Assembly (NCBI GenBank): GCA_002269645.1
Contig: NIVC01003788.1
Coordinates: forward strand, 1 to 59,852
Length of the DNA: 59,852 bases
Origin: Macrostomum lignano
Lineage: Eukaryota
Direction of reading: 5' to 3'
The notes under the pieces are model-generated. The model saw only the letters and a program-made list of their open reading frames with translations, had not been told where the DNA came from and ran no database searches. The position numbers were made by a program, and so were the translations under genes. Positions within the stretch are counted from its first letter, which is position 1, and every line of letters begins with the position of its first letter. Shown piece by piece: positions 851-23,444 of this stretch.

Positions 851-1930
851 TCAGATGACACCGCTCGGTAGCGAATGCGGAACCCGCGCATCAGCACGAG
901 CCGTCAGTGCTGAAGATGATGCACATGCGGGTGCCGGAGCTGTTCCGGGACGTCGAGAACACCGGCAGGACGCTGCAGTTCGGGTAGTAGTCGACAGCTC
1001 GGCCATGAGCACCGAGTTCGCATCGAGCAGCTGCACCTTGTCGAGCTGGGTCTCCAATTCTAGGAATTCGAACCAGACTCAATGAAAAAGGATTCCGGCA
1101 CCGTCAGGATCCAGGAGCAGGTCATGTTGATCGAGTAGTACCGTCCGGATTCGAATCCCGGATGGCTCACGAGCGATCTGGGCGGGTCGAACGGACTCAC
1201 AGCCACCTGCTGGCTGCTGTTGCAGACTGGAAGCATTGATGGCGGGAAGGGTCATGTGCAGTCATGGCATGCTGTTGCAGACTGGAAGCATTGATGGCGG
1301 GAAGGGTCATGTGCGGTCATGGCATGCTGTTGCAGACTGGAAGCATTGATGGCGGGAAGGGTCATGTGCGGTCATGGCATGCTGTTGCAGACTGGAAGCA
1401 TTGATGGCGGGAAGGGTCATGTGCGGTCATGGCATGCTGTTGCAGACTGGATGCATTGATGGCGGGAAGGGTCATGTGCGGTCATGGCATGCTGTTGCAG
1501 ACTGGAAGCATTGATGGCGGGAAGGGTCATGTGCGGTCATGGCATGCTGTTGCAGACTGGATGCATTGATGGCGGGAAGGGTCATGTGCGGTCATGTGCT
1601 ATCGTCATTGCTTACTCAATCCTGCCCTTCATCCTGCCCAGCAAGTAAAGCGGTTTCTTAGTCGGAGAGAATTATTTAAAGACCCCACCCAGTACCTCCG
1701 CCGCTGGTGACGCGGTCCAGTACGGCATGATAGCGAATACGAAATCCTCGTCTCGCAACGAGACCCGTCGACGATTCTGCCAGAAGGTTGGATTTTCCCA
1801 TAAGCGCCAGTGTATTCAGTACACCCCTGTGCGCCAGTCAGCACTGCGCCTCAGTGCAGCCTTGACAAGCCTCCAAATTTCGTCAGCACGTCGACCACAT
1901 GTGCTTGCATCAGCTCTGTTTCGTTGATCA
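850..1930 (-). pseudogene. Multi-CUB-domain gene fragment (two exons), frameshifted as assembled
   Basis: Minus-strand pieces in alternating frames read SHPGFESGRYYSINMTCSWILTVPE / WFEFLELETQLDKVQLLDANS / MCIIFSTDGS / VLMRGFRIRYRAV (~850-1226), which are typical CUB strands. A second CUB C-terminus, ARRGFRIRYHAV, lies at ~1720-1760. At least 3 frame switches; could be assembly errors in a functional gene. Confidence 0.7.
1215..1597. repeat. 55-bp minisatellite, ~7 copies, in the CUB gene intron
   Basis: Unit GCTGTTGCAGACTGGAAGCATTGATGGCGGGAAGGGTCATGTGCGGTCATGGCAT; copies start at 1381 and 1436. Confidence 0.95.
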
Positions 1931-1931
1931 C

Positions 1932-2331
1932 TACACCTTTTTTCCATTCTATTTTGGCAAACGTGCAATCAAAGTCAAAATCTTTTCATTCAATTCAGAC
2001 AGTTTATGGTAGTTCTTGGCCGGCTTGTCTAAATAGATTGAAATTTGTCGGAATTGATAGGAAATTTCGCAGTATGAGCCATAGATAGGAGGACAGAAAA
2101 AGCCAATTCATAGCCAACTGTCGGAATTGATTGCAAATTGTTTGAATTGATTGCAAAGTGTCGGTTTCTCGTGGTAGCTTGTTTGCTTTGTTTGAAAATT
2201 GTCGCTTTTGAAAGCACATTTGTCGGAATTGAATGCACGTCCGGCCAAGAACTACCATAAACTGTCTGAATTGAATGAAAAGATTTTGACTTTGATTGCA
2301 CATTTGCCAAAATAGAATGGAAAAAGGTGTA
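1932..2331. mobile_element. MITE with ~90-bp terminal inverted repeats and TA target duplication (Tc1/mariner-type non-autonomous element)
   Basis: TA|CACCTTTTTTCCATTCTATTTTGGCAAACGTGCAATCAAAGTCAAAATC...GGCCGG at the left is the reverse complement of 2241-2329, which ends AAAAAGGTG|TA. No coding capacity. Confidence 0.85.
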
Positions 2332-2498
2332 CTGTTAAATGTAGGATTAATACATGTATATAGCTGCTGCGTGCTTTAATGGTTTTGGTCACGAGTGCGC
2401 GTAGCCAAAGACCATTGAAGCACAAAGAAGCTATATACTGTATTAGTTACATTATAATACTACGAATTACCATAGACAAAAGGTTGCAGTTGCGTTAG

Positions 2499-3235
2499 AT
2501 GCACGTTGAAGACGAGAAGAGAGAGAAGAATAAAGCAGAGCTAGCTTTACTGACTCAAAAAGAGAATGGAACTACCGAGAAAAGAAAACTAATAGATCTG
2601 CTGCACTTTCCAAATGAAATAATTTCTTGGAATGTCCACGGATCAAATCAAGAATTTATTGACGCATTCCCTCAAGGATTTATCAAGGATCAAGGACGCA
2701 TTCCCTGAGTCCAAGATTTCTACAGCTCTACAGGCCTACAGATGGAATATCTGGAAAAAATGTCCAGGAACTACTGGAAACCTGCTTTGTGTAAGAACGT
2801 AAGAATGTAACGTGCACTGCATCGTGGTAGTGACGTGACTCCTACAGCCCAAGAGCCTGCTAACACCACTGTTGAGCCGCCTAATCAAGAGCAACATGTT
2901 GTGATGGTCGATTCATTGGCAGTGATGAGCCAGTCTCTGAACACAGTGGAACAACTGATATCACCACCGCAACGACGCTGACCAACACTACTGGCAATGG
3001 CAGGCCTACAGTGATCTACAACATCTACGGTACACTGCACAACTGCATTTTTGAAGTGAATCAGATCGAACTACGCGTGAGCAGACTATATTTTAGGACC
3101 GCATGCTTGCTTTCAATCTCTGTGTACTTAATATCTGCTCCCGTTTTTAGCGTGCCTATAATGCATTATCATATAGACTATCGTTTTTTAATGCATTTTT
3201 TAATGAAGCTGTTAAGTCACGATAAATTGCCATAG
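2499..3235 (+). pseudogene. Degenerate second ORF convergent with the recombinase
   Basis: Broken pieces MHVEDEKREKNKAEL...EFIDAFP / ESKISTALQAYRWNIWKK / ...VIYNIYGTLHNCIFEVN. The last resembles the recombinase C-terminal NCxF motif. A local GACGCATTCCCT duplication (2661/2695) disrupts the frame. Confidence 0.4.
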
Positions 3236-3383
3236 ATTATGAGCGAGAAATTCACTGTTTTTATTAATTTAAGCAACAAGAACTTTAACAGGAAACAGAT
3301 CGAGGATATAGCAAAGCAAACGAATACCAAAGTATTTGATTTTCGACAGTTAAGACTTATAAGTACGAGCTATATATTCTTTG

Positions 3384-4733
3384 TTAGAATTTGAACGTGC
3401 ACCCATCGAAGAGGCAGTTGGCAAACATCGGCTGTTGCACACTTCGCAGGTCAACTTGAGCTTGCTGCATGACTGTTGCACTAGTGGTTGCACTCGTAGT
3501 CGCATCGGTTGGTGCGGCCAAATTGTCACTAACAGCGGTAGCAACCTTCCTGAGGGTTCTGTCACGCTTGCGTGCGAGATAACGTCGAACAGTGGACTCC
3601 GATCGTTGTCCCGTTACCGCCATTATCTCCCCCATAGGCATTCCTTTGTCGAAAAGATCCGCAATACGCGTGACGCGTATGCAGTGATTCGTGTACTGCT
3701 TGGAGAGGTTGCACACACTACTAACGTGCTTCATGAATGCAGCCAACCAATTGACACCGCGCACTTGCGTAGCAGAGAATCGAATTTGTCCTCCCGAATT
3801 GTTAGTCAGAGGGCGCGGAAAGAACGAGGACGAATTCTGCGGTAACAAACTCTGATAATGCAGGATCAACTCCCGCTGAGCGCCGTAGATCCGACTCTGT
3901 TTGCGCTGATTTCCCTTGCATTTTGTTGGATCGCTAGTCTGGTTTTTTGTCTTTAACGGCGGCAACGCAAGATATGGATTCCCATCAGCGTCGACTTCTT
4001 CTTGGAGCGTGCCAACTTGCTTTAGACTTGACAGGTGTTCTTGACCTCTCTCGCCCAGGACATACAGCAGCGTAAATAGTACTTCATCTTGCAACCGTTC
4101 TGCTGTAGAACGGTCAAAATAAGCACGCATTTTCTGTAAATCACCTTTTTCTATTGGCTCGTGCTGATTGACAGTGCCTCCATCAGCATGAAAATGCCGC
4201 ACCTTTACTCGCAGCATCCGGTTGGCAGTGGCGAACTCGTCACTGGAAATAATATTTGTTCGACGCTTCAGCACGAGAGTCAAGTACCTCTGCACTCCAG
4301 CACGAATGCAGACCAACGTAGCTGGCGAATAGCAACTGCCGTCAGATTTTTTTAGACAGAAGTAAAAGAACCTTAAAAATTCGGCCAAGCGACTGTCACT
4401 GATCACGCTTACATCCACAGCACCATGTTTCTTCAAAAACTCCACGAACATTTTGCCATACAGAAACATGTGTTCTCGTGTAGTGCTCGGCAGTGATTCC
4501 AGTTCGGCAACATCCATCGCACTGGGTAAATCAGATAGTTCTGGAAGCTCGACACTAGAAACCGCAGCGGCCTCATCAGCCGTCTCGATTTTAGTCAGGT
4601 AGTCGATAAAATCTCCAAGAATTTCATCGGAACTGTGGTTCACGGCGCTCAGTTCACTCAGAAAATCTAGTTCAGTAGACGAGACGCCATCTAAACTGTC
4701 GACCGGTAGGTTTTTCCAGTTGATAAGAGACAT
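3384..4733 (-). CDS. Crypton/DUF3504-type tyrosine recombinase, 449 aa, intronless
   Basis: YSPATLVCIRAGVQRYL (Crypton-type N-terminal helix), LGERGQE (catalytic R), LKTKNQ (K), NHCIR (HxxR), TGQRSESTVRRY (H/W position and nucleophile Y), C-terminal FANCLFDGCTFKF. An AATAAA signal lies on the minus strand near 3260. Confidence 0.9.
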   Translation of the reverse strand: MSLINWKNLPVDSLDGVSSTELDFLSELSAVNHSSDEILGDFIDYLTKIETADEAAAVSSVELPELSDLPSAMDVAELESLPSTTREHMFLYGKMFVEFLKKHGAVDVSVISDSRLAEFLRFFYFCLKKSDGSCYSPATLVCIRAGVQRYLTLVLKRRTNIISSDEFATANRMLRVKVRHFHADGGTVNQHEPIEKGDLQKMRAYFDRSTAERLQDEVLFTLLYVLGERGQEHLSSLKQVGTLQEEVDADGNPYLALPPLKTKNQTSDPTKCKGNQRKQSRIYGAQRELILHYQSLLPQNSSSFFPRPLTNNSGGQIRFSATQVRGVNWLAAFMKHVSSVCNLSKQYTNHCIRVTRIADLFDKGMPMGEIMAVTGQRSESTVRRYLARKRDRTLRKVATAVSDNLAAPTDATTSATTSATVMQQAQVDLRSVQQPMFANCLFDGCTFKF

Positions 4734-6376
4734 TTTTAATTCGATTTCTCTCGCTTCTTGCTTCTAGTTCTTAACTTCCTAACAGACTTCATGGTCGAGC
4801 TTTTCTTTTAGAGAACTGTATTCTAAAAAATTGTCTATGGTCCAATTAGTGGGGGCTCTGCCCCCACACCCCCGCAAGGGAGCTGCGCCCCCTTGTCCAT
4901 GCTCACTGCCGAGCCAATATCTATGGCACGAAGACACTGCAGCGTTACTTAATGGCGTGGCTTAATGGCGTTACATAATGATCAACCGAAAACGCTAGTC
5001 TATATGATAATGCGATTAAGTCTATGGTTTCAGACTACCATTAATGCCTGCGTTAAATGCACGCTGATTATATTTTGAAATACATAATGATTACCACGGT
5101 TTCGCCATAGACTATGTTGTTAAATGCACACTTCGTCGTGTTATAATGGAGGAATCTAGCACGCTGACGAGTGCGTCAATGGCTGAAACACGAGTGCGCG
5201 TAGCGCACGAGGGTTTTTACCATAGACGCACAAGTCAAAGTGCTTGATTCCCATTCTTATTTGATCCAACATGTGTGGCTAAAGTAGACAAGGGTGAAGC
5301 TGGGGGTGTGGAGTTAGACTTGAACCATAGACAAAATATGCGCGAGCTAGTCTGAACATTCTTGCACGATGGAAAGAAGATTATGCTTGTAGTCTATGGC
5401 TGTTATGCTAAATATAGAAACATTGCGCATTACATTCTTGCACGATTGACATTCTTGCACGGAGTGCACATGTAAATTCAAGGTGCTTTTGCCATAGACA
5501 CTTGCATTTCTGCACGCATATGGCGACTTCCAAAGCATTCTTGCACGCTGGATCAAATAAGAATGATATATTCCTGCACGGTCACGAGTGCGGGAATGAC
5601 ATCTGCACGAGTGCGCGCTAGCGCACGAGTGCACGATGTCCTTCACGCACGAGTGAACGTGAAGGAATTCCATTGTCGGATGATTCATCGTGCAGGAATG
5701 CACAAAACCGTGCAGGAATGCATTTCTGCGCCTAATGCTTTTTCAGTGAGATTTTACCATAGACATCCATTCCTGCACGCAAAAGAGTGCAGGAATGCCA
5801 TTCTTGCATGGAAAATCAGCCGACAATGGCTATTATCTTATACTTTATGCCTTCCCAACGGGAAGATAGGATGGCCACTGTTTTTCGTACCAAATTTGAG
5901 TTATCCAATCAGTTGTAATTCCAGACTCCACATGTAGTGTTTTGTACTCTATCGCCATTTATTCATGCTGCGTATTGTGGGCGAGGGGAGTTGGAGACTG
6001 GGTGGGGAAGAGATTGTATAGGCTGGCAGGTGGCAGAAACGGTGTGGTAATGCTTTGAATGGACGGAAAATTTACTGCATCAAAATTATTAAAAAAGTCT
6101 CATAGGCTACTTCAATTATTGCTTGTCCGCCGGCGACCCCTACAGCTGATCATTAGGCATCTGGCACTATGCAGACCCGGTCCCACCGCCGGAGCCAGTT
6201 AGTTCTACGGATATCTGTGTCCAAGTATAGAGAAAACACTGCTTCTGCAAAGGCAAGGTCATAAATATTTAATGAAAAGTTGGCTGCGTTTAACGAGAGG
6301 ATATTGCTGGGGGGTTGCTGTCAGCGTGTGCACAGATGGTCTGGGAATTTCTGGCCAGAGATACTGCAATAGGTGT

Positions 6377-21609: not shown

Positions 21610-23444
21610 GAGCGATGAATCTATCAAAATGCCACACTGATGAGGAGCATCAGGTGACTAATTTTCTGTCCAGCTGCGCAAACTGCTGCTCTGTTCGCAT
21701 ATTTTTCTCCTCTAATAATTGGTATTCTTTTTGTTGTGCGTCTTTTTTCTCCGCCTGATACATTTCGTCAATGATTTTCGCATATTTCTACTCTCAGTAG
21801 AGTAGCTTGATTGATAAATTTGTGAATTTTTTCTGCGCTTCAAGGTGAAAAATGTCTGGCAACATTTTTCGGATTCTTTTAAAAGTTTTTTTTCCAGTTC
21901 CGATCCCCGATGCTCCGGGCTGACTCGGCACAGCTGTATTCAACCATGCCTTACCTTATCAATTACTGTAGACCGCTGTAGTGAGTATAACTTTCCGAAT
22001 AATTTATTGTACGTACTCTATAATCCCGCGTGTCCCCCGGACTCTGCGTGATTTTTCACTTGTTCTTCTGCTGATAGTGATAAATATTATTATAGTTTTC
22101 ACTGATAGCCTGGCACCTGCACTTAGACTCCTACAGAAGATGATAAATAAAAGTCCAAATGGCTATGTAGTGTATTTATCGCGCAGAAAATTTTTGTATA
22201 TTTGAAAAAATGACTTACATTATTACTCTAGAATTATTATTTACGCCTTGGGTTGGAAGTTTCCAATCCAGAATTCAAGCGCACCCTGTCGCAGTTTAGA
22301 TCACCGATACTGGAACTACTACCTTAGATAGATGGTTGATAGCCCACTCAGCACATTTGCGTGTAAGCTACTTTCAGTTCAGTAGTAAGTTAAACAGAAG
22401 CATTTCAATGTATTTTCAAAGCCAAGGCTCATTTATTGGCTCTTGCCCCCAACTTCTACCCAAACTCTCCAATCGCGCCTTTCTACTAACCCTCGTCCCG
22501 CCCCAATTTTTATTGGCCTTCTCGGAATTCCAGCCTAAAGCTGCCATGTACATTTCAGTGGACTGGCTAATGTACATTATCGCTGAACCAATTAGCAAGC
22601 TGTTTACGACTGCAAGCTTGGGCTTCTAAACTTATTAAAGTAATTTCAGCTGCCATTATTTCTATATAATAGCTTATGCATTCTTCTTTGCTACTGAACT
22701 GAAAGTAGAAAGCTGTTTTACTAAAGAATGTCTGAGTGCCCATCTATCCGTGGTTTAGATTAGCAAACCGTAAACTGGACTGCGAGGCCAAAGATCTTTT
22801 ATGAGAACAGGACATGAAAATGAAATTGACTTCCAGTTGCAGTTGGAACTTTTATAGTTGCTTACAAGTAGCTAAAAAGTGGCTAAAAAGTAGAACAATG
22901 GCTTGTATTCCACAAACTTTAAACTCTTTAAAACTCAGCTCAGTCAACAATGGAACGAGACTCAAGGCTTCAGTCTGTGCGTGCGACCCGCATAAGGAAT
23001 TAGCGCGCCACGAGTCTGGCTCAACCGATCTCAGGCGTGACCCAATGCATCAACTATTATCATTTATCCACAGGTTGGCCACGCGCTCGAGCAGATCCCA
23101 ATCAGTCCGTGCCCTGTCATCATATTGCACAGGCCGGCTCTCCCCTTCATCGCTGGCAAAATTATTCATTCATTTTACTGTGTGCGACTGTCAGGGCTCA
23201 TGCGGGCCCTGCTCGTATCTGCCGCTTGGCTCGGGTTGCGCAACACCACCCTAATTACTGCCGTAGCCTGCGCATGTCCCGGCCGTGAAAGCAGATTTTA
23301 AAGGGTGTTTAATATAGACGATTTAATTGTTCTCTTGTATGCTTCTGAGCTTTTCTGTGGCCCTTTCTTAAGCTGCCAGCTTAGTAAGAGGTCCGTCTCC
23401 TAATTCTGTTAACTCCCGTCCTGTCACTATCTCTGCTTCCCCCC

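What the first reader, a model, noticed from the sequence alone, without database searches (positions are those of the whole stretch)
2345..5250. Tyrosine-recombinase gene bracketed by two directly repeated lox/att-like palindromic sites, predicting a 2.8-kb self-excising circle
Seen: an identical 16-bp core CACGAGTGCGCGTAGC occurs at 2390-2405 and 5189-5204 in the same orientation. Each core is the centre of an imperfect palindrome with ~40-bp arms. Site 1 pairs TAATACATGTATATAGCTGCTGCGTGCTTTAATGGTTTTGG with CCAAAGACCATTGAAGCACAAAGAAGCTATATACTGTATTA. Site 2 pairs GGAATCTAGCACGCTGACGAGTGCGTCAATGG with CCATAGACGCACAAGTCAAAGTGCTTGATTCC. The 2,799 bp between cores hold the intact YR ORF, its upstream region and a second ORF remnant. 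Established: tyrosine recombinases such as Cre, Flp, XerCD and lambda Int act on inverted binding arms around an asymmetric spacer, and direct orientation gives excision. Cryptons (Goodwin et al. 2003; Kojima and Jurka 2011) are proposed to move via circles and, as I recall, have only short terminal direct repeats. Inference: these are the recombination sites of an animal Cre/lox-like element with an extended site architecture that I do not recall being described.
Basis: partly seen in the sequence, partly recalled or inferred. Interest (0 to 1): 0.85.

Follow-up and report, generated by a model that had tools for sequence, protein, structure and literature searches.

The report
Crypton transposon with conserved hairpin sites
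The repeated palindromes are real and belong to a structured DNA hairpin that accompanies this family of tyrosine-recombinase transposons in many marine animals. They mark the starts of three neighbouring gene-less units, not the two ends of the recombinase element, which is a separate 1.9-kb copy inserted between them.

Summary
The window is Macrostomum lignano DNA. The 16-mer occurs at 2390 and 5189, each inside a strong palindrome, and the 449-aa ORF is an intact Cre-like, CryptonA-lineage recombinase.

A 99.5%-identical second genomic copy shares just window 3165-5044. So the mobile unit is 1.88 kb, ends in a 4-bp direct repeat (TAAT, gene sense), has 23-25-bp inverted repeats, and excludes both cores. 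A third core copy lies at 5606.

Relatives in marine metagenomes share one plan: (N)AAT, then a 90-180-bp palindrome, an inverted repeat, the gene, and the partner repeat ending AAT. About 20 loci show the palindrome beside the gene, and about 8 lineages show the full plan. The palindrome apex is a GCGNAGC or GCGNNAGC "mini-hairpin" flanked by CGAG/CGAG tandem G·A mismatches.

In the window, sites 1-3 each head a non-autonomous unit on the + strand, arranged head to tail. The recombinase copy is nested antisense in the first unit and has lost 82 bp of its own hairpin.

The hairpin is most likely the family's attachment site, with strand exchange at its base. This architecture appears undescribed.

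The parts
2336..2339 (+). Inferred 5' boundary of non-autonomous unit N1 (TAAA where relatives have TAAT), followed by TGTAGGAT and then the palindrome
   Evidence: By analogy with L001 (TTAATGGTAG-AT versus TAAATG-TAGGAT) and with the (N)AAT-then-palindrome rule in relatives. This is an inference.
2346..2447 (+). Site 1: the 5' palindrome (hairpin) of unit N1. It contains the 16-bp core at 2390-2405 and the apex GCGTAGC at 2399-2405. Its right-hand CGAG flank has degenerated to CAAAG.
   Evidence: (dG -30.9, z -7.6).
2450..2466 (+). Inverted repeat of N1 (CATTATAATACTACGAA) directly after the palindrome. It pairs with 5132-5148.
   Evidence: pair I10, 17 nt, 88%. The reconstructed junction folds as one hairpin, -36.2 kcal/mol. 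The pair is weak on its own and is supported by its position.
2467..3164 (+). Body of N1. It has no intact ORF. Positions 2695-2998 are a dispersed M. lignano repeat.
   Evidence: fragments recur in the M. lignano gene model P0014.
3165..5044 (-). Autonomous CryptonA-type unit (1,880 bp), nested in N1. In gene sense it starts TAAT-GGTAG (5043-5035) and ends ...GATAAT (3170-3165).
   Evidence: 99.5% identical to L001 over 1,870 bp with 9 substitutions and no indels, plus the 10-bp CTACCATTAA. The flanks are unrelated.
3165..3187 (-). Inverted repeat at the 3' end (gene sense AAAACGATAGTCTATATGATAAT). Its last four bases, TAAT (3168-3165), form the terminal direct repeat.
   Evidence: (pair I3, 25 nt, 96%).
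3384..4733 (-). Tyrosine recombinase, 449 aa. Catalytic R229, K263, H350, R353 and Y385 are present; Gln376 stands where the family consensus has His.
   Evidence: pLDDT 86.8; Cre, E = 3.6e-10.
4942..4980 (-). Three tandem 13-bp repeats (GCGTTACTTAATG-like) just inside the 5' inverted repeat. They are candidate accessory binding sites.
   Evidence: (family D8). The function is inferred.
4989..5013 (-). Inverted repeat at the 5' side (gene sense GCATTATCATATAGACTAGCGTTTT)
   Evidence: (pair I3).
5014..5034 (-). The single surviving arm (gene sense TCTGAAACCATAGACTTAATC) of this copy's own 5' hairpin. Compared with L001, 82 bp are missing between 5034 and 5035: the other arm plus the apex CACGAGTG-GCGAAGC-CACGAGTG.
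5035..5044 (-). 5' terminus (gene sense TTAAT-GGTAG). TAAT (5043-5040) is the terminal direct repeat.
   Evidence: The P0017 family has the same TAAT...TAAT.
5045..5148 (+). 3' part of N1. It ends with the partner inverted repeat TTCGTCGTGTTATAATG (5132-5148) and TAAT (5144-5147).
   Evidence: (pair I10).
5150..5250 (+). Site 2: the 5' palindrome of unit E2. It contains the core at 5189-5204 and the apex GCGTAGC at 5198-5204, flanked by CACGAG on both sides, with an outer CGAG/CAAG pair.
   Evidence: (dG -34.5, z -8.4).
5252..5273 (+). Inverted repeat of E2 (CATTCTTATTTGATCCAACATG), directly after site 2
   Evidence: pair I4, 22 nt, 91%. The junction fold gives -51.7 kcal/mol.
5544..5565 (+). 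Partner inverted repeat at the 3' end of E2, ending ...AAGAAT(G)
   Evidence: (pair I4).
5578..5660 (+). Site 3: the 5' palindrome of unit E3. Its apex is GCGCTAGC (5615-5622) and it carries four CGAG.
   Evidence: (dG -35.6, z -6.2).
5670..5700 (+). Inverted repeat of E3
   Evidence: pair I1, 31 nt, 81%. The junction fold gives -62.0 kcal/mol.
5799..5829 (+). Partner inverted repeat at the 3' end of E3, ending ...GACAAT(GG)

Best explanation
Window 2336-5829 is a small cluster of Crypton-type (tyrosine-recombinase) transposon units in the flatworm Macrostomum lignano. All are built on one plan.

The plan, read in the unit's own orientation:
- a 5' boundary at (N)AAT;
- a 90-120-bp imperfect palindrome;
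- an inverted repeat directly after it;
- the body, which may or may not hold a recombinase gene;
- the partner inverted repeat, ending ...AAT at the 3' boundary.

Three gene-less units (N1, E2, E3) lie head to tail on the + strand. A recently mobile autonomous copy (3165-5044, gene on the - strand) is inserted inside N1 at an ATTA/TAAT target. That is why the recombinase gene looks 'bracketed' by two direct palindromes 2,799 bp apart. The autonomous copy has lost 82 bp of its own hairpin compared with its sister copy L001.

How it most likely works (inferred):
- The unit excises as a circle.
- In the circle, the two inverted repeats and the palindrome join into one 150-170-nt hairpin or cruciform.
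- This structure is the recombinase's attachment site.
- Its apex is a GCGNAGC or GCGNNAGC mini-hairpin. CGAG/CGAG tandem G·A mismatches make the two strands non-equivalent.
- Strand exchange happens at the AAT next to a 2-3-nt bulge at the hairpin's base, against a TAAT-like target. That leaves the 4-bp direct repeat.
- Integration beside the site of a resident copy builds head-to-tail arrays.

Shown here: unit boundaries, repeats, nesting, conservation of the hairpin, and an intact catalytic site. Inferred: the circle, that the hairpin is what the recombinase binds, and the exact exchange point.
For: Organism and protein:
- 99% identical to M. lignano protein PAA61609.
- R229, E232, K263, R353 and Y385 are invariant in 51 relatives.
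- Relatives carry Pfam DUF3504, QRICH1 and Phage_integrase.
- A profile hits XerA and QRICH1 in the PDB.
- The AlphaFold model (pLDDT 86.8) matches Cre over about 340 columns, E = 3.6e-10.

Mobile unit:
- L001 shares only window 3165-5034 plus CTACCATTAA, at 99.5% identity, with unrelated flanks.
- The inverted repeats are 25 nt at 96%.
- TAAT lies at both ends of both copies.

Independent family P0017 (33% aa identity; 6 contigs, 4-5 different flanks):
- a roughly 1,890-bp unit with TAAT...TAAT ends;
- a 113-129-bp palindrome 4-9 bp inside the 5' end, with apex GGCTGAAGCC-GCGTAGC-GGCTGAAGCC;
- a perfect 15-bp inverted-repeat pair.

Family-wide:
- 36 of the 92 loci scanned had palindromes of at least 50 bp.
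- In 26 palindromes from about 22 loci, CGAG outnumbers CTCG 60 to 7.
- Apexes fit the mini-hairpin consensus GCGNAGC/GCGNNAGC (review PMC13037366).
- In 8 lineages the inverted repeat starts right after the palindrome and its partner ends (N)AAT.
- Reconstructed junctions fold into one hairpin of -48 to -64 kcal/mol, with a bulge right after AAT.

Window units:
- E2's repeat pair is 22 nt at 91% and E3's is 31 nt at 81%. Each sits exactly between consecutive palindromes.
- Junction folds give -36, -52 and -62 kcal/mol.
- All six CACGAGTG in 2390-5648 are on the + strand, against 0.12 expected per 4 kb.

Head-to-tail arrays recur elsewhere: L018 has two genes only 64% identical, each preceded by palindromes 91% identical to each other.
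Against: - Only two DNA copies of the M. lignano autonomous unit could be fetched, so TAAT as the exchange site rests on two copies plus one other family.
- N1's boundaries rest on a 15/17 inverted pair that is not significant region-wide (about 0.5 expected), and its 5' 'TAAA' is a mismatch.
- No circle junction, empty site or binding data exist.
- The palindromes could serve another role, such as a priming signal or a promoter.
- In more distant relatives the palindrome lies downstream of the gene with the G·A-rich strand antisense, so the plan is not uniform.
- In the L040 family no palindrome of 50 bp or more was detected and the termini differ.
- The 82-bp gap in the window copy could be an assembly collapse of a hairpin.
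- Genome-wide abundance of the palindromes in M. lignano could not be measured.
Confidence: 0.62

Rival explanations
1. One reading: sites 1 and 2 are the two lox-like ends of a single 2.8-kb element. The recombinase exchanges strands inside the identical 16-bp core and releases a 2,799-bp circle.
For: The 16-mers are identical and in direct orientation, both sit in palindromes, and an intact Cre-like recombinase lies between them.
Against: - The 99.5%-identical copy in L001 shares nothing outside 3165-5044.
- Each unit in the relatives has one palindrome, lying wholly inside the unit, with flanks diverging 50-75 bp from the apex.
- A third core lies at 5606.
- The outer arms of sites 1 and 2 are unrelated.
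- 2695-2998 is a separate dispersed repeat.
- The sites are antisense to the gene, compared with L001.
Confidence: 0.04
2. The bracket works by accident. The composite (N1 plus its nested autonomous copy) can be excised as a circle of about 2.8 kb by exchange between the AAT sites at 2336-2339 and 5144-5147, not inside the cores. It would behave as a new composite element that carries site 1 as its hairpin.
For: N1 has the full plan: palindrome, inverted-repeat pair and a terminal TAAT. The nested copy supplies an intact recombinase but lacks its own apex, so site 1 could substitute in cis.
Against: No second copy of the composite was seen. N1's 5' site reads TAAA. N1's repeat pair is weak (15/17). 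The recombinase gene points the opposite way from the canonical plan.
Confidence: 0.12
3. The hairpin is a conserved cis element of the family but not the recombination site. It could be a single-strand initiation or priming signal for copying a single-stranded intermediate, as GCGAAAGC and GCGTTAGC mini-hairpins are proposed to be at the complementary-strand origins of phages G4, St-1 and alpha3. It could also be a promoter or regulatory structure for the recombinase gene.
For: The apex matches the mini-hairpin consensus found at ssDNA replication and transcription origins. In close relatives it lies 130-380 bp upstream of the start codon on the sense strand.
Against: - Unit boundaries sit at the base of the hairpin in every lineage where they could be mapped.
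- Gene-less units keep the hairpin.
- In distant relatives the hairpin is downstream and antisense, which argues against a 5'-UTR or promoter role.
- The element encodes no replication protein.
Confidence: 0.18
4. The palindromes are ordinary foldback, MITE or satellite repeats of a very repeat-rich genome, and lie near the recombinase gene by chance.
For: The window is packed with tandem repeats (82 TRF rows). A separate 95-bp-arm foldback abuts site 1.
Against: - The only two CACGAGTG in the 21 kb of L001 lie in the hairpin abutting the second copy.
- The same apex and CGAG design occurs next to recombinase genes of 25-33% identity in unrelated samples.
- There are no further copies in the other 55 kb of the window.
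Confidence: 0.03

Closest known systems
Crypton DNA transposons, CryptonA group (Goodwin et al. 2003; Kojima and Jurka 2011, PMC3212892)
   Same: - A single-ORF element that encodes only a tyrosine recombinase.
- The recombinase's relatives carry DUF3504 and QRICH1-type domains.
- A short (4-bp) terminal direct repeat fits exchange at microhomology with the target.
- A circular intermediate is presumed.
- Non-autonomous derivatives exist.
   Different: Animal Cryptons were reported to have no terminal repeats, direct or inverted (PMC3212892). Cryptons in general are described as lacking terminal inverted repeats (PMC13465315). Here there are 15-25-bp inverted repeats, a conserved 90-180-bp palindrome with a mini-hairpin apex, and head-to-tail arrays.
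Cre/loxP and Flp/FRT simple sites
   Same: The recombinase fold is closest to Cre. The apex region looks lox-like: about 9-bp quasi-inverted arms around a 7-8-bp asymmetric centre.
   Different: Copy boundaries are not in that centre. The palindrome is 10 times longer than loxP. Partner sites share structure rather than arm sequence. There is one site per unit, not two.
Integron attC sites and the CTX-phi attP(+) hairpin, which are folded single-strand substrates of the tyrosine recombinases IntI and XerCD (own knowledge; IntI4-attC structure 2a3v appears among the fold matches)
   Same: - Imperfect palindromes of about 60-150 nt, conserved in structure more than in sequence.
- Strand-specific irregularities (here tandem G·A mismatches and a bulge).
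- The exchange point lies at the base of the hairpin, next to a short conserved sequence.
   Different: Those systems are bacterial. Here the most conserved part is the apex, whereas attC conserves the base. Nothing shows that a single strand is the substrate, and the partner site is a simple TAAT-like target.
Mini-hairpin DNA motifs GCGNAGC and GCGNNAGC (review PMC13037366)
   Same: The apex sequences GCGTAGC, GCGAAGC, GCGTTAGC, GCGCTAGC, GCGTCAGC and GCGGAGC all fit the consensus. GCGTTAGC is the very motif at the St-1 and alpha3 phage origins.
   Different: Known natural examples are in phage and plasmid origins and promoters, not in eukaryotic transposons. Stability in this context was not measured.
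Starship elements of fungi (captain tyrosine recombinase, DUF3435)
   Same: Eukaryotic elements moved by a tyrosine recombinase, with short direct repeats and sometimes inverted repeats. A 2026 preprint reports a circular intermediate.
   Different: Starships are giant cargo carriers confined to fungi and use a different recombinase family. No comparable hairpin site is known for them.

Membership tests
Crypton (CryptonA lineage) | Encodes a tyrosine recombinase with the catalytic R-K-H-R-(H/W)-Y set and a two-domain Cre-like fold | tested here: met
   R229, K263, H350, R353 and Y385 are conserved. Gln376 replaces the usual His. The model has pLDDT 86.8 and matches Cre at E = 3.6e-10.
Crypton (CryptonA lineage) | The recombinase belongs to the DUF3504/QRICH1-related clade | tested here: inconclusive
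   The window protein itself gives only sub-threshold Pfam hits: Phage_integrase 17 bits, QRICH1 16 bits, no DUF3504. Its relatives at E = 1e-35 to 1e-85 do hit DUF3504 and QRICH1, and the family profile hits QRICH1 (9hjt) in the PDB. No phylogeny was made.
Crypton (CryptonA lineage) | No reverse transcriptase or other transposase in the unit | tested here: met
   The 449-aa ORF is the only long, family-supported ORF in the 1.88-kb unit. The short overlapping ORFs are mechanical calls.
Crypton (CryptonA lineage) | Short (4-6 bp) terminal direct repeats that reflect exchange with the target | tested here: met
   TAAT lies at both ends in the window copy, in L001 and in the P0017 family. Other lineages have (N)AAT. 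The M. lignano case rests on only 2 copies.
Crypton (CryptonA lineage) | No terminal inverted repeats, as Cryptons are described | tested here: not met
   Inverted repeats of 23-25 bp occur here and of 11-21 bp in 7 other lineages. This is the main reason to call it a variant.
Crypton (CryptonA lineage) | Moves through an excised circle | not testable with these tools
   This needs reads or PCR across the predicted junction.
   Copy boundaries lie at 3165 and 5044, not at 2390 and 5189. Relatives keep the whole palindrome inside the unit.
   Sites 1 and 2 share only the 16-mer in a scored alignment, plus about 10 bp of weak inner-arm similarity seen by eye.
attC/CTX-phi-like folded hairpin attachment site | An imperfect palindrome conserved in structure while its arm sequence diverges | tested here: met
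   arms differ between lineages, and each folds at -48 to -64 kcal/mol.
attC/CTX-phi-like folded hairpin attachment site | Strand-specific irregularities that make the two strands non-equivalent | tested here: met
   CGAG outnumbers CTCG 60 to 7 inside the palindromes. A GNA or GNNA apex occurs on the same strand. A 2-3-nt bulge follows AAT on the 5' arm.
attC/CTX-phi-like folded hairpin attachment site | Recombined as folded single-stranded DNA | not testable with these tools
   This needs biochemistry with top-strand, bottom-strand and duplex substrates.
MITE / foldback element | High copy number, terminal inverted repeats with target-site duplication, and no link to one protein family | tested here: inconclusive
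   E2 and E3 are small units bounded by inverted repeats, but they carry the family hairpin. Genome-wide copy number could not be measured. No target-site duplication beyond AAT was seen.
DIRS/Ngaro-type tyrosine-recombinase retrotransposons | Reverse transcriptase/RNase H together with the recombinase, and split or inverted long repeats | tested here: not met
   There is no reverse transcriptase in the unit or its flanks.

The most novel reading that the evidence does not exclude
A widespread lineage of animal Cryptons uses a folded, strand-specific DNA hairpin as its attachment site, in the manner of integron attC or CTX-phi attP. The hairpin would have a mini-hairpin apex, tandem G·A internal loops, and a bulge marking the cleavage point. 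That implies a single-stranded or cruciform recombination substrate, and possibly a single-stranded circular intermediate. No eukaryotic transposon is known to work this way.
Probability: 0.22. Interest if true: 0.9.

Novelty: new variant of a known kind. Interest (0 to 1): 0.72.

Why it matters
How Cryptons move has been a model by analogy since 2003. For animal Cryptons no terminal repeats or recombination sites had been found.

This analysis gives defined ends (TAAT), inverted repeats, and a conserved structured site with specific, mutable features: the apex GCGN(N)AGC, the CGAG/CGAG mismatches, and the bulge after AAT. These are seen in a transgenesis-capable model flatworm and in many marine animals. 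Together they make the mechanism directly testable by predicted circle junction, binding, cleavage and reporter assays.

If the hairpin is recognised as a folded strand, that would extend attC/CTX-type recombination to eukaryotes. It could also supply compact new recombinase and site pairs.

The result also explains local head-to-tail arrays of related units. It further flags transposon fragments annotated as exons in M. lignano gene models.

Tried and rejected
- An exact look-up of the window protein, P0004 and P0005 found no contigs, so only one extra M. lignano locus (L001) could be read.
- The word-indexed protein search with an alignment added nothing. The exhaustive search did.
- The PDB sequence search with the shallow alignment found nothing meaningful. 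The first AlphaFold run with 6 sequences was poor, pLDDT 48. Both improved with the 51-sequence alignment.
- I tested whether 2464-3164 is a second recombinase remnant. tblastn with 13 family proteins gave only E of about 3-5, so I rejected this, although the C-terminal-like 'NCIFEV' stretch remains suggestive.
- A concatenated translation of flank ORFs, used to fish for other genomic copies of the palindromes, returned only P0014, which matches 2695-2998.
- I rejected a cut-and-paste model (inverted repeats plus target-site duplication). The right-hand repeat is 31 bp from the end, there is no DDE protein, and ATTA lies inside the shared block.
- The idea that L002's 3' end continues into its 5' end (a circle or tandem) was not supported.
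- The short contigs L002-L006 gave no clear hairpin.
A 10-sequence alignment worked.
- Rfam and tRNA scans found nothing.
- Boundaries in the more distant families (L033/34, L040 group, L037/48, L049 group) did not give a uniform terminal repeat.
- No formal covariation count was made, because arm lengths vary too much for a reliable alignment.

Full report
1. THE OBSERVATION

The 16-mer CACGAGTGCGCGTAGC is at 2390-2405 and 5189-5204 on the + strand. There are no other matches at up to 2 mismatches, against 0.02 expected. Both copies lie in strong imperfect palindromes. DNA folds give -30.9 kcal/mol (z = -7.6) and -34.5 kcal/mol (z = -8.4), and no shuffle does as well (arms). A clean 449-aa ORF runs from 4733 to 3384 on the - strand.

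It is incomplete in one respect. A third palindrome at 5578-5660 carries CACGAGTGCGCGCTAGC, the core with one extra base. Site 2 aligns with it over about 54 bp, scoring 52 against 18.8 +/- 2.2 for shuffles. Sites 1 and 2 share only the 16-mer in a scored alignment.

2. ORGANISM AND PROTEIN

The ORF is 99% identical to Macrostomum lignano PAA61609. Its other close hits are M. lignano 'Tyr recombinase domain' proteins. The window is dense with tandem repeats.

An exhaustive profile search finds 5,101 relatives. The ones I tested carry Pfam DUF3504, QRICH1 and Phage_integrase. These are the marks of the CryptonA lineage and its domesticated derivatives (Kojima and Jurka 2011, PMC3212892).

In a 51-sequence alignment R229, E232, K263, R353 and Y385 are invariant, and H350 nearly so. 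The Macrostomum proteins have Gln376 where the consensus is His. The family profile hits XerA and QRICH1 in the PDB. A confident model (pLDDT 86.8) matches Cre over both domains (E = 3.6e-10, TM 0.65 on the target). The enzyme looks functional.

3. WHERE THE ELEMENT ENDS

The one other M. lignano locus I could fetch is L001 (NIVC01002014.1). It matches the window only over 3165-5034: 1,870 bp, 9 substitutions, no indels. Everything else in the 21 kb is unrelated, apart from one unconnected repeat.

Base-level comparison gives three results:
- In gene sense, both copies start ...|TAAT-GGTAG and end ...GTCTATATGATAAT|. That is a 4-bp terminal direct repeat.
- There are 23-25-bp inverted repeats, window 3165-3187 against 4989-5013 (96%).
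- L001 has 82 extra bp between window 5034 and 5035.

Those 82 bp complete a 104-bp palindrome (L001 9619-9722; -36.8 kcal/mol, z = -11). Its centre is CACGAGTG-GCGAAGC-CACGAGTG. These are the only two CACGAGTG in the 21 kb of L001.

At the same time, a palindrome of the same kind is physically part of the element. A chimeric gene model from another assembly (P0007) differs from both copies at A407P, which points to a third copy or an allele.

4. THE SAME PLAN IN DISTANT RELATIVES

Protein P0017 (33% identity) sits on six marine-metagenome contigs. They share a block of about 1,890 bp at 99.5-100% identity, with 4-5 different flanks on each side. That unit also begins TAAT and ends ...GAATAAT.

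It has a 113-129-bp palindrome 4-9 bp inside its 5' end, centred on GGCTGAAGCC-GCGTAGC-GGCTGAAGCC. A 15-bp sequence right after the palindrome pairs perfectly with the 3' terminus. P0018's contig has a 112-bp palindrome centred on GGCC-GCGTTAGC-GGCC.

A scan of metagenome contigs with the family's conserved peptides returned 80 loci. Of the 92 loci scanned in all, 36 hold palindromes of at least 50 bp, mostly 90-185 bp.

Laid side by side, their arms are unrelated between lineages but their centres follow one design:
- CGAG, then a short G+C stem;
- a GNA or GNNA loop;
- the complementary stem, then CGAG.

A second CGAG/CGAG pair often lies about 20-25 bp further out. L015 (31% protein identity) reads CGAGTGC-GCGTTAGC-GCACGAG, almost the flatworm sequence.

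Inside 26 palindromes from about 22 loci, CGAG outnumbers its complement CTCG 60 to 7. A true palindrome would give equal numbers. In a hairpin, CGAG opposite CGAG makes C:G, G·A, A·G, G:C, so the two strands are not equivalent.

The apex sequences seen are GCGTAGC, GCGAAGC, GCGGAGC, GCGTTAGC, GCGCTAGC, GCGTCAGC and CCGAAGG. They match the 'mini-hairpin DNA' consensus GCGNAGC/GCGNNAGC, and CCGAAGG matches the related ssiA motif. These are exceptionally stable DNA hairpins known from phage and plasmid single-strand origins. GCGTTAGC is the St-1 and alpha3 motif (review PMC13037366).

5. THE JUNCTION HAIRPIN

In eight lineages, including M. lignano, an inverted repeat begins within 0-5 bp of the palindrome's 3' side. 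Its partner lies at the 3' end of the unit and ends (N)AAT.

Joining the 3' end to the 5' end, as in an excised circle, gives one continuous hairpin of 150-170 nt (-48 to -64 kcal/mol). A 2-3-nt bulge on the 5' arm directly follows the AAT. The mapped boundaries thus sit at a structural discontinuity at the base of a long hairpin.

6. REREADING THE WINDOW

Each of the three palindromes is followed at once by an inverted repeat whose partner lies just before the next palindrome:
- N1: 2450-2466 with 5132-5148 (17 nt, 88%).
- E2: 5252-5273 with 5544-5565 (22 nt, 91%).
- E3: 5670-5700 with 5799-5829 (31 nt, 81%).

The 3' ends read ...TTATAAT...AAGAAT(G) and ...GACAAT(GG). The reconstructed junctions fold at -36, -52 and -62 kcal/mol. 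All six CACGAGTG are on the + strand.

The simplest reading is three gene-less units, head to tail on the + strand:
- N1, about 2336-5147;
- E2, 5148-5565;
- E3, 5566-5829.

The autonomous copy (3165-5044, - strand) is inserted into N1 at ...TATAATGC-ATTA-ATGCC.... The 2,799-bp spacing of the cores equals N1 (about 920 bp) plus the 1,880-bp insertion.

Part of N1 (2695-2998) recurs in another M. lignano gene model, P0014, as expected for a dispersed non-autonomous repeat. Head-to-tail arrangement is not peculiar to this locus. L018 carries two recombinase genes only 64% identical, each preceded by a palindrome, and the two palindromes are 91% identical.

N1 is the weakest link. Its repeat pair alone is not significant (about 0.5 expected region-wide), and its 5' site reads TAAA.

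7. MECHANISM

Shown:
- the boundaries, repeats and nesting;
- conservation and strand asymmetry of the hairpin;
- an intact catalytic set.

Inferred:
- The unit excises as a circle.
- The junction hairpin or cruciform is the attachment site.
- Exchange occurs at the AAT beside the bulge, against TAAT-like targets.
- Integration next to resident sites builds the arrays.

The closest analogies for such a site are integron attC and the CTX-phi attP hairpin (own knowledge; IntI4-attC 2a3v is among the fold matches).

Alternatives are a priming or origin signal or a regulatory structure. Gene-less units keep the hairpin, and in distant relatives it is downstream and antisense. Both points argue against a simple promoter or 5'-UTR role.

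8. COMPARISON WITH WHAT IS KNOWN, AND NOVELTY

This is a Crypton by content and by terminal microhomology. But animal Cryptons were reported to have no terminal repeats, and Cryptons in general are described as lacking inverted repeats. I found no paper describing a palindromic or hairpin site in Cryptons; Repbase entries could not be checked. I therefore rate it a new variant of a known kind.

9. LIMITS

- There are only two DNA copies for the flatworm element.
- There is no genome-wide census, no reads, and no experiments.
- Metagenome contigs are short and their hosts are unknown.
- Distant families (for example the L040 group) differ in termini and show no detected palindrome.
- The missing 82 bp in the window copy may be an assembly artefact.

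Noticed in passing
window 1929-2334: A separate foldback with 95-bp arms (1929-2023 and 2241-2334, 97% complementary) around a 217-bp loop that holds 20-bp tandem repeats. It ends exactly where N1 begins. Its arms contain AACTACCATAAAC, which resembles the autonomous unit's terminus GACTACCATTAA.
   Followed up: partly
window 2470-5764; L002 36 and 1678; L004 60 and 150: The 8-mer CCATAGAC/GTCTATGG is strongly enriched. Nine of its 11 window hits lie here, against 1.5 expected for the whole window. It falls in the subterminal parts of every unit and in the hairpin arms of L001. It recurs in the non-coding ends of relatives with about 50% protein identity from other samples. It may be an accessory binding site specific to the Macrostomum lineage.
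   Followed up: partly
window 4852-4896: A G+C-rich, self-complementary block (GGGGGCTCTGCCCCCACACCCCCGCAAGGGAGCTGCGCCCCCTTG) about 120 bp upstream of the recombinase start codon. It is also present in L001, with one substitution at window 4899 just beside it.
   Followed up: no
window 2695-2998; proteins P0014 and P0007: M. lignano UniProt gene models contain transposon pieces as 'exons'. P0014 (ankyrin-repeat protein) includes translated fragments of N1. P0007 ('neprilysin', 1,558 aa) includes the whole recombinase. These are likely annotation chimeras.
   Followed up: partly
L018 1-4050: Two full-length recombinase genes (464 aa each, about 64% DNA identity) lie head to tail. Each is preceded by a palindrome of about 117 bp, and the two palindromes are 91% identical. 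The site is far better conserved than the gene.
   Followed up: partly
window 1-59852: Tandem-repeat density is extreme: 82 TRF rows with periods of 4-273 bp and many arrays of 300-1,700 bp. The recombinase is the only long clean ORF in 60 kb.
   Followed up: no
window 22363-22712 and L001 17774-18093: Another dispersed repeat (about 350 bp, 81% identity) is shared by the two loci and is unrelated to the Crypton.
   Followed up: no
window 3384-4733 (residue 376): All Macrostomum-group proteins have Gln at the position where the wider family has His (TGHK becomes TGQ[KR]). In other tyrosine recombinases this catalytic-pocket position holds His or Trp.
   Followed up: no
L024, L033, L035, L068, L075, L081, L089 and others: In more distant relatives the palindrome lies 300-630 bp downstream of the recombinase match, with the G·A-rich strand antisense to the gene. 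This is the opposite of the close relatives. The hairpin, rather than the gene, seems to define the unit's polarity.
   Followed up: partly
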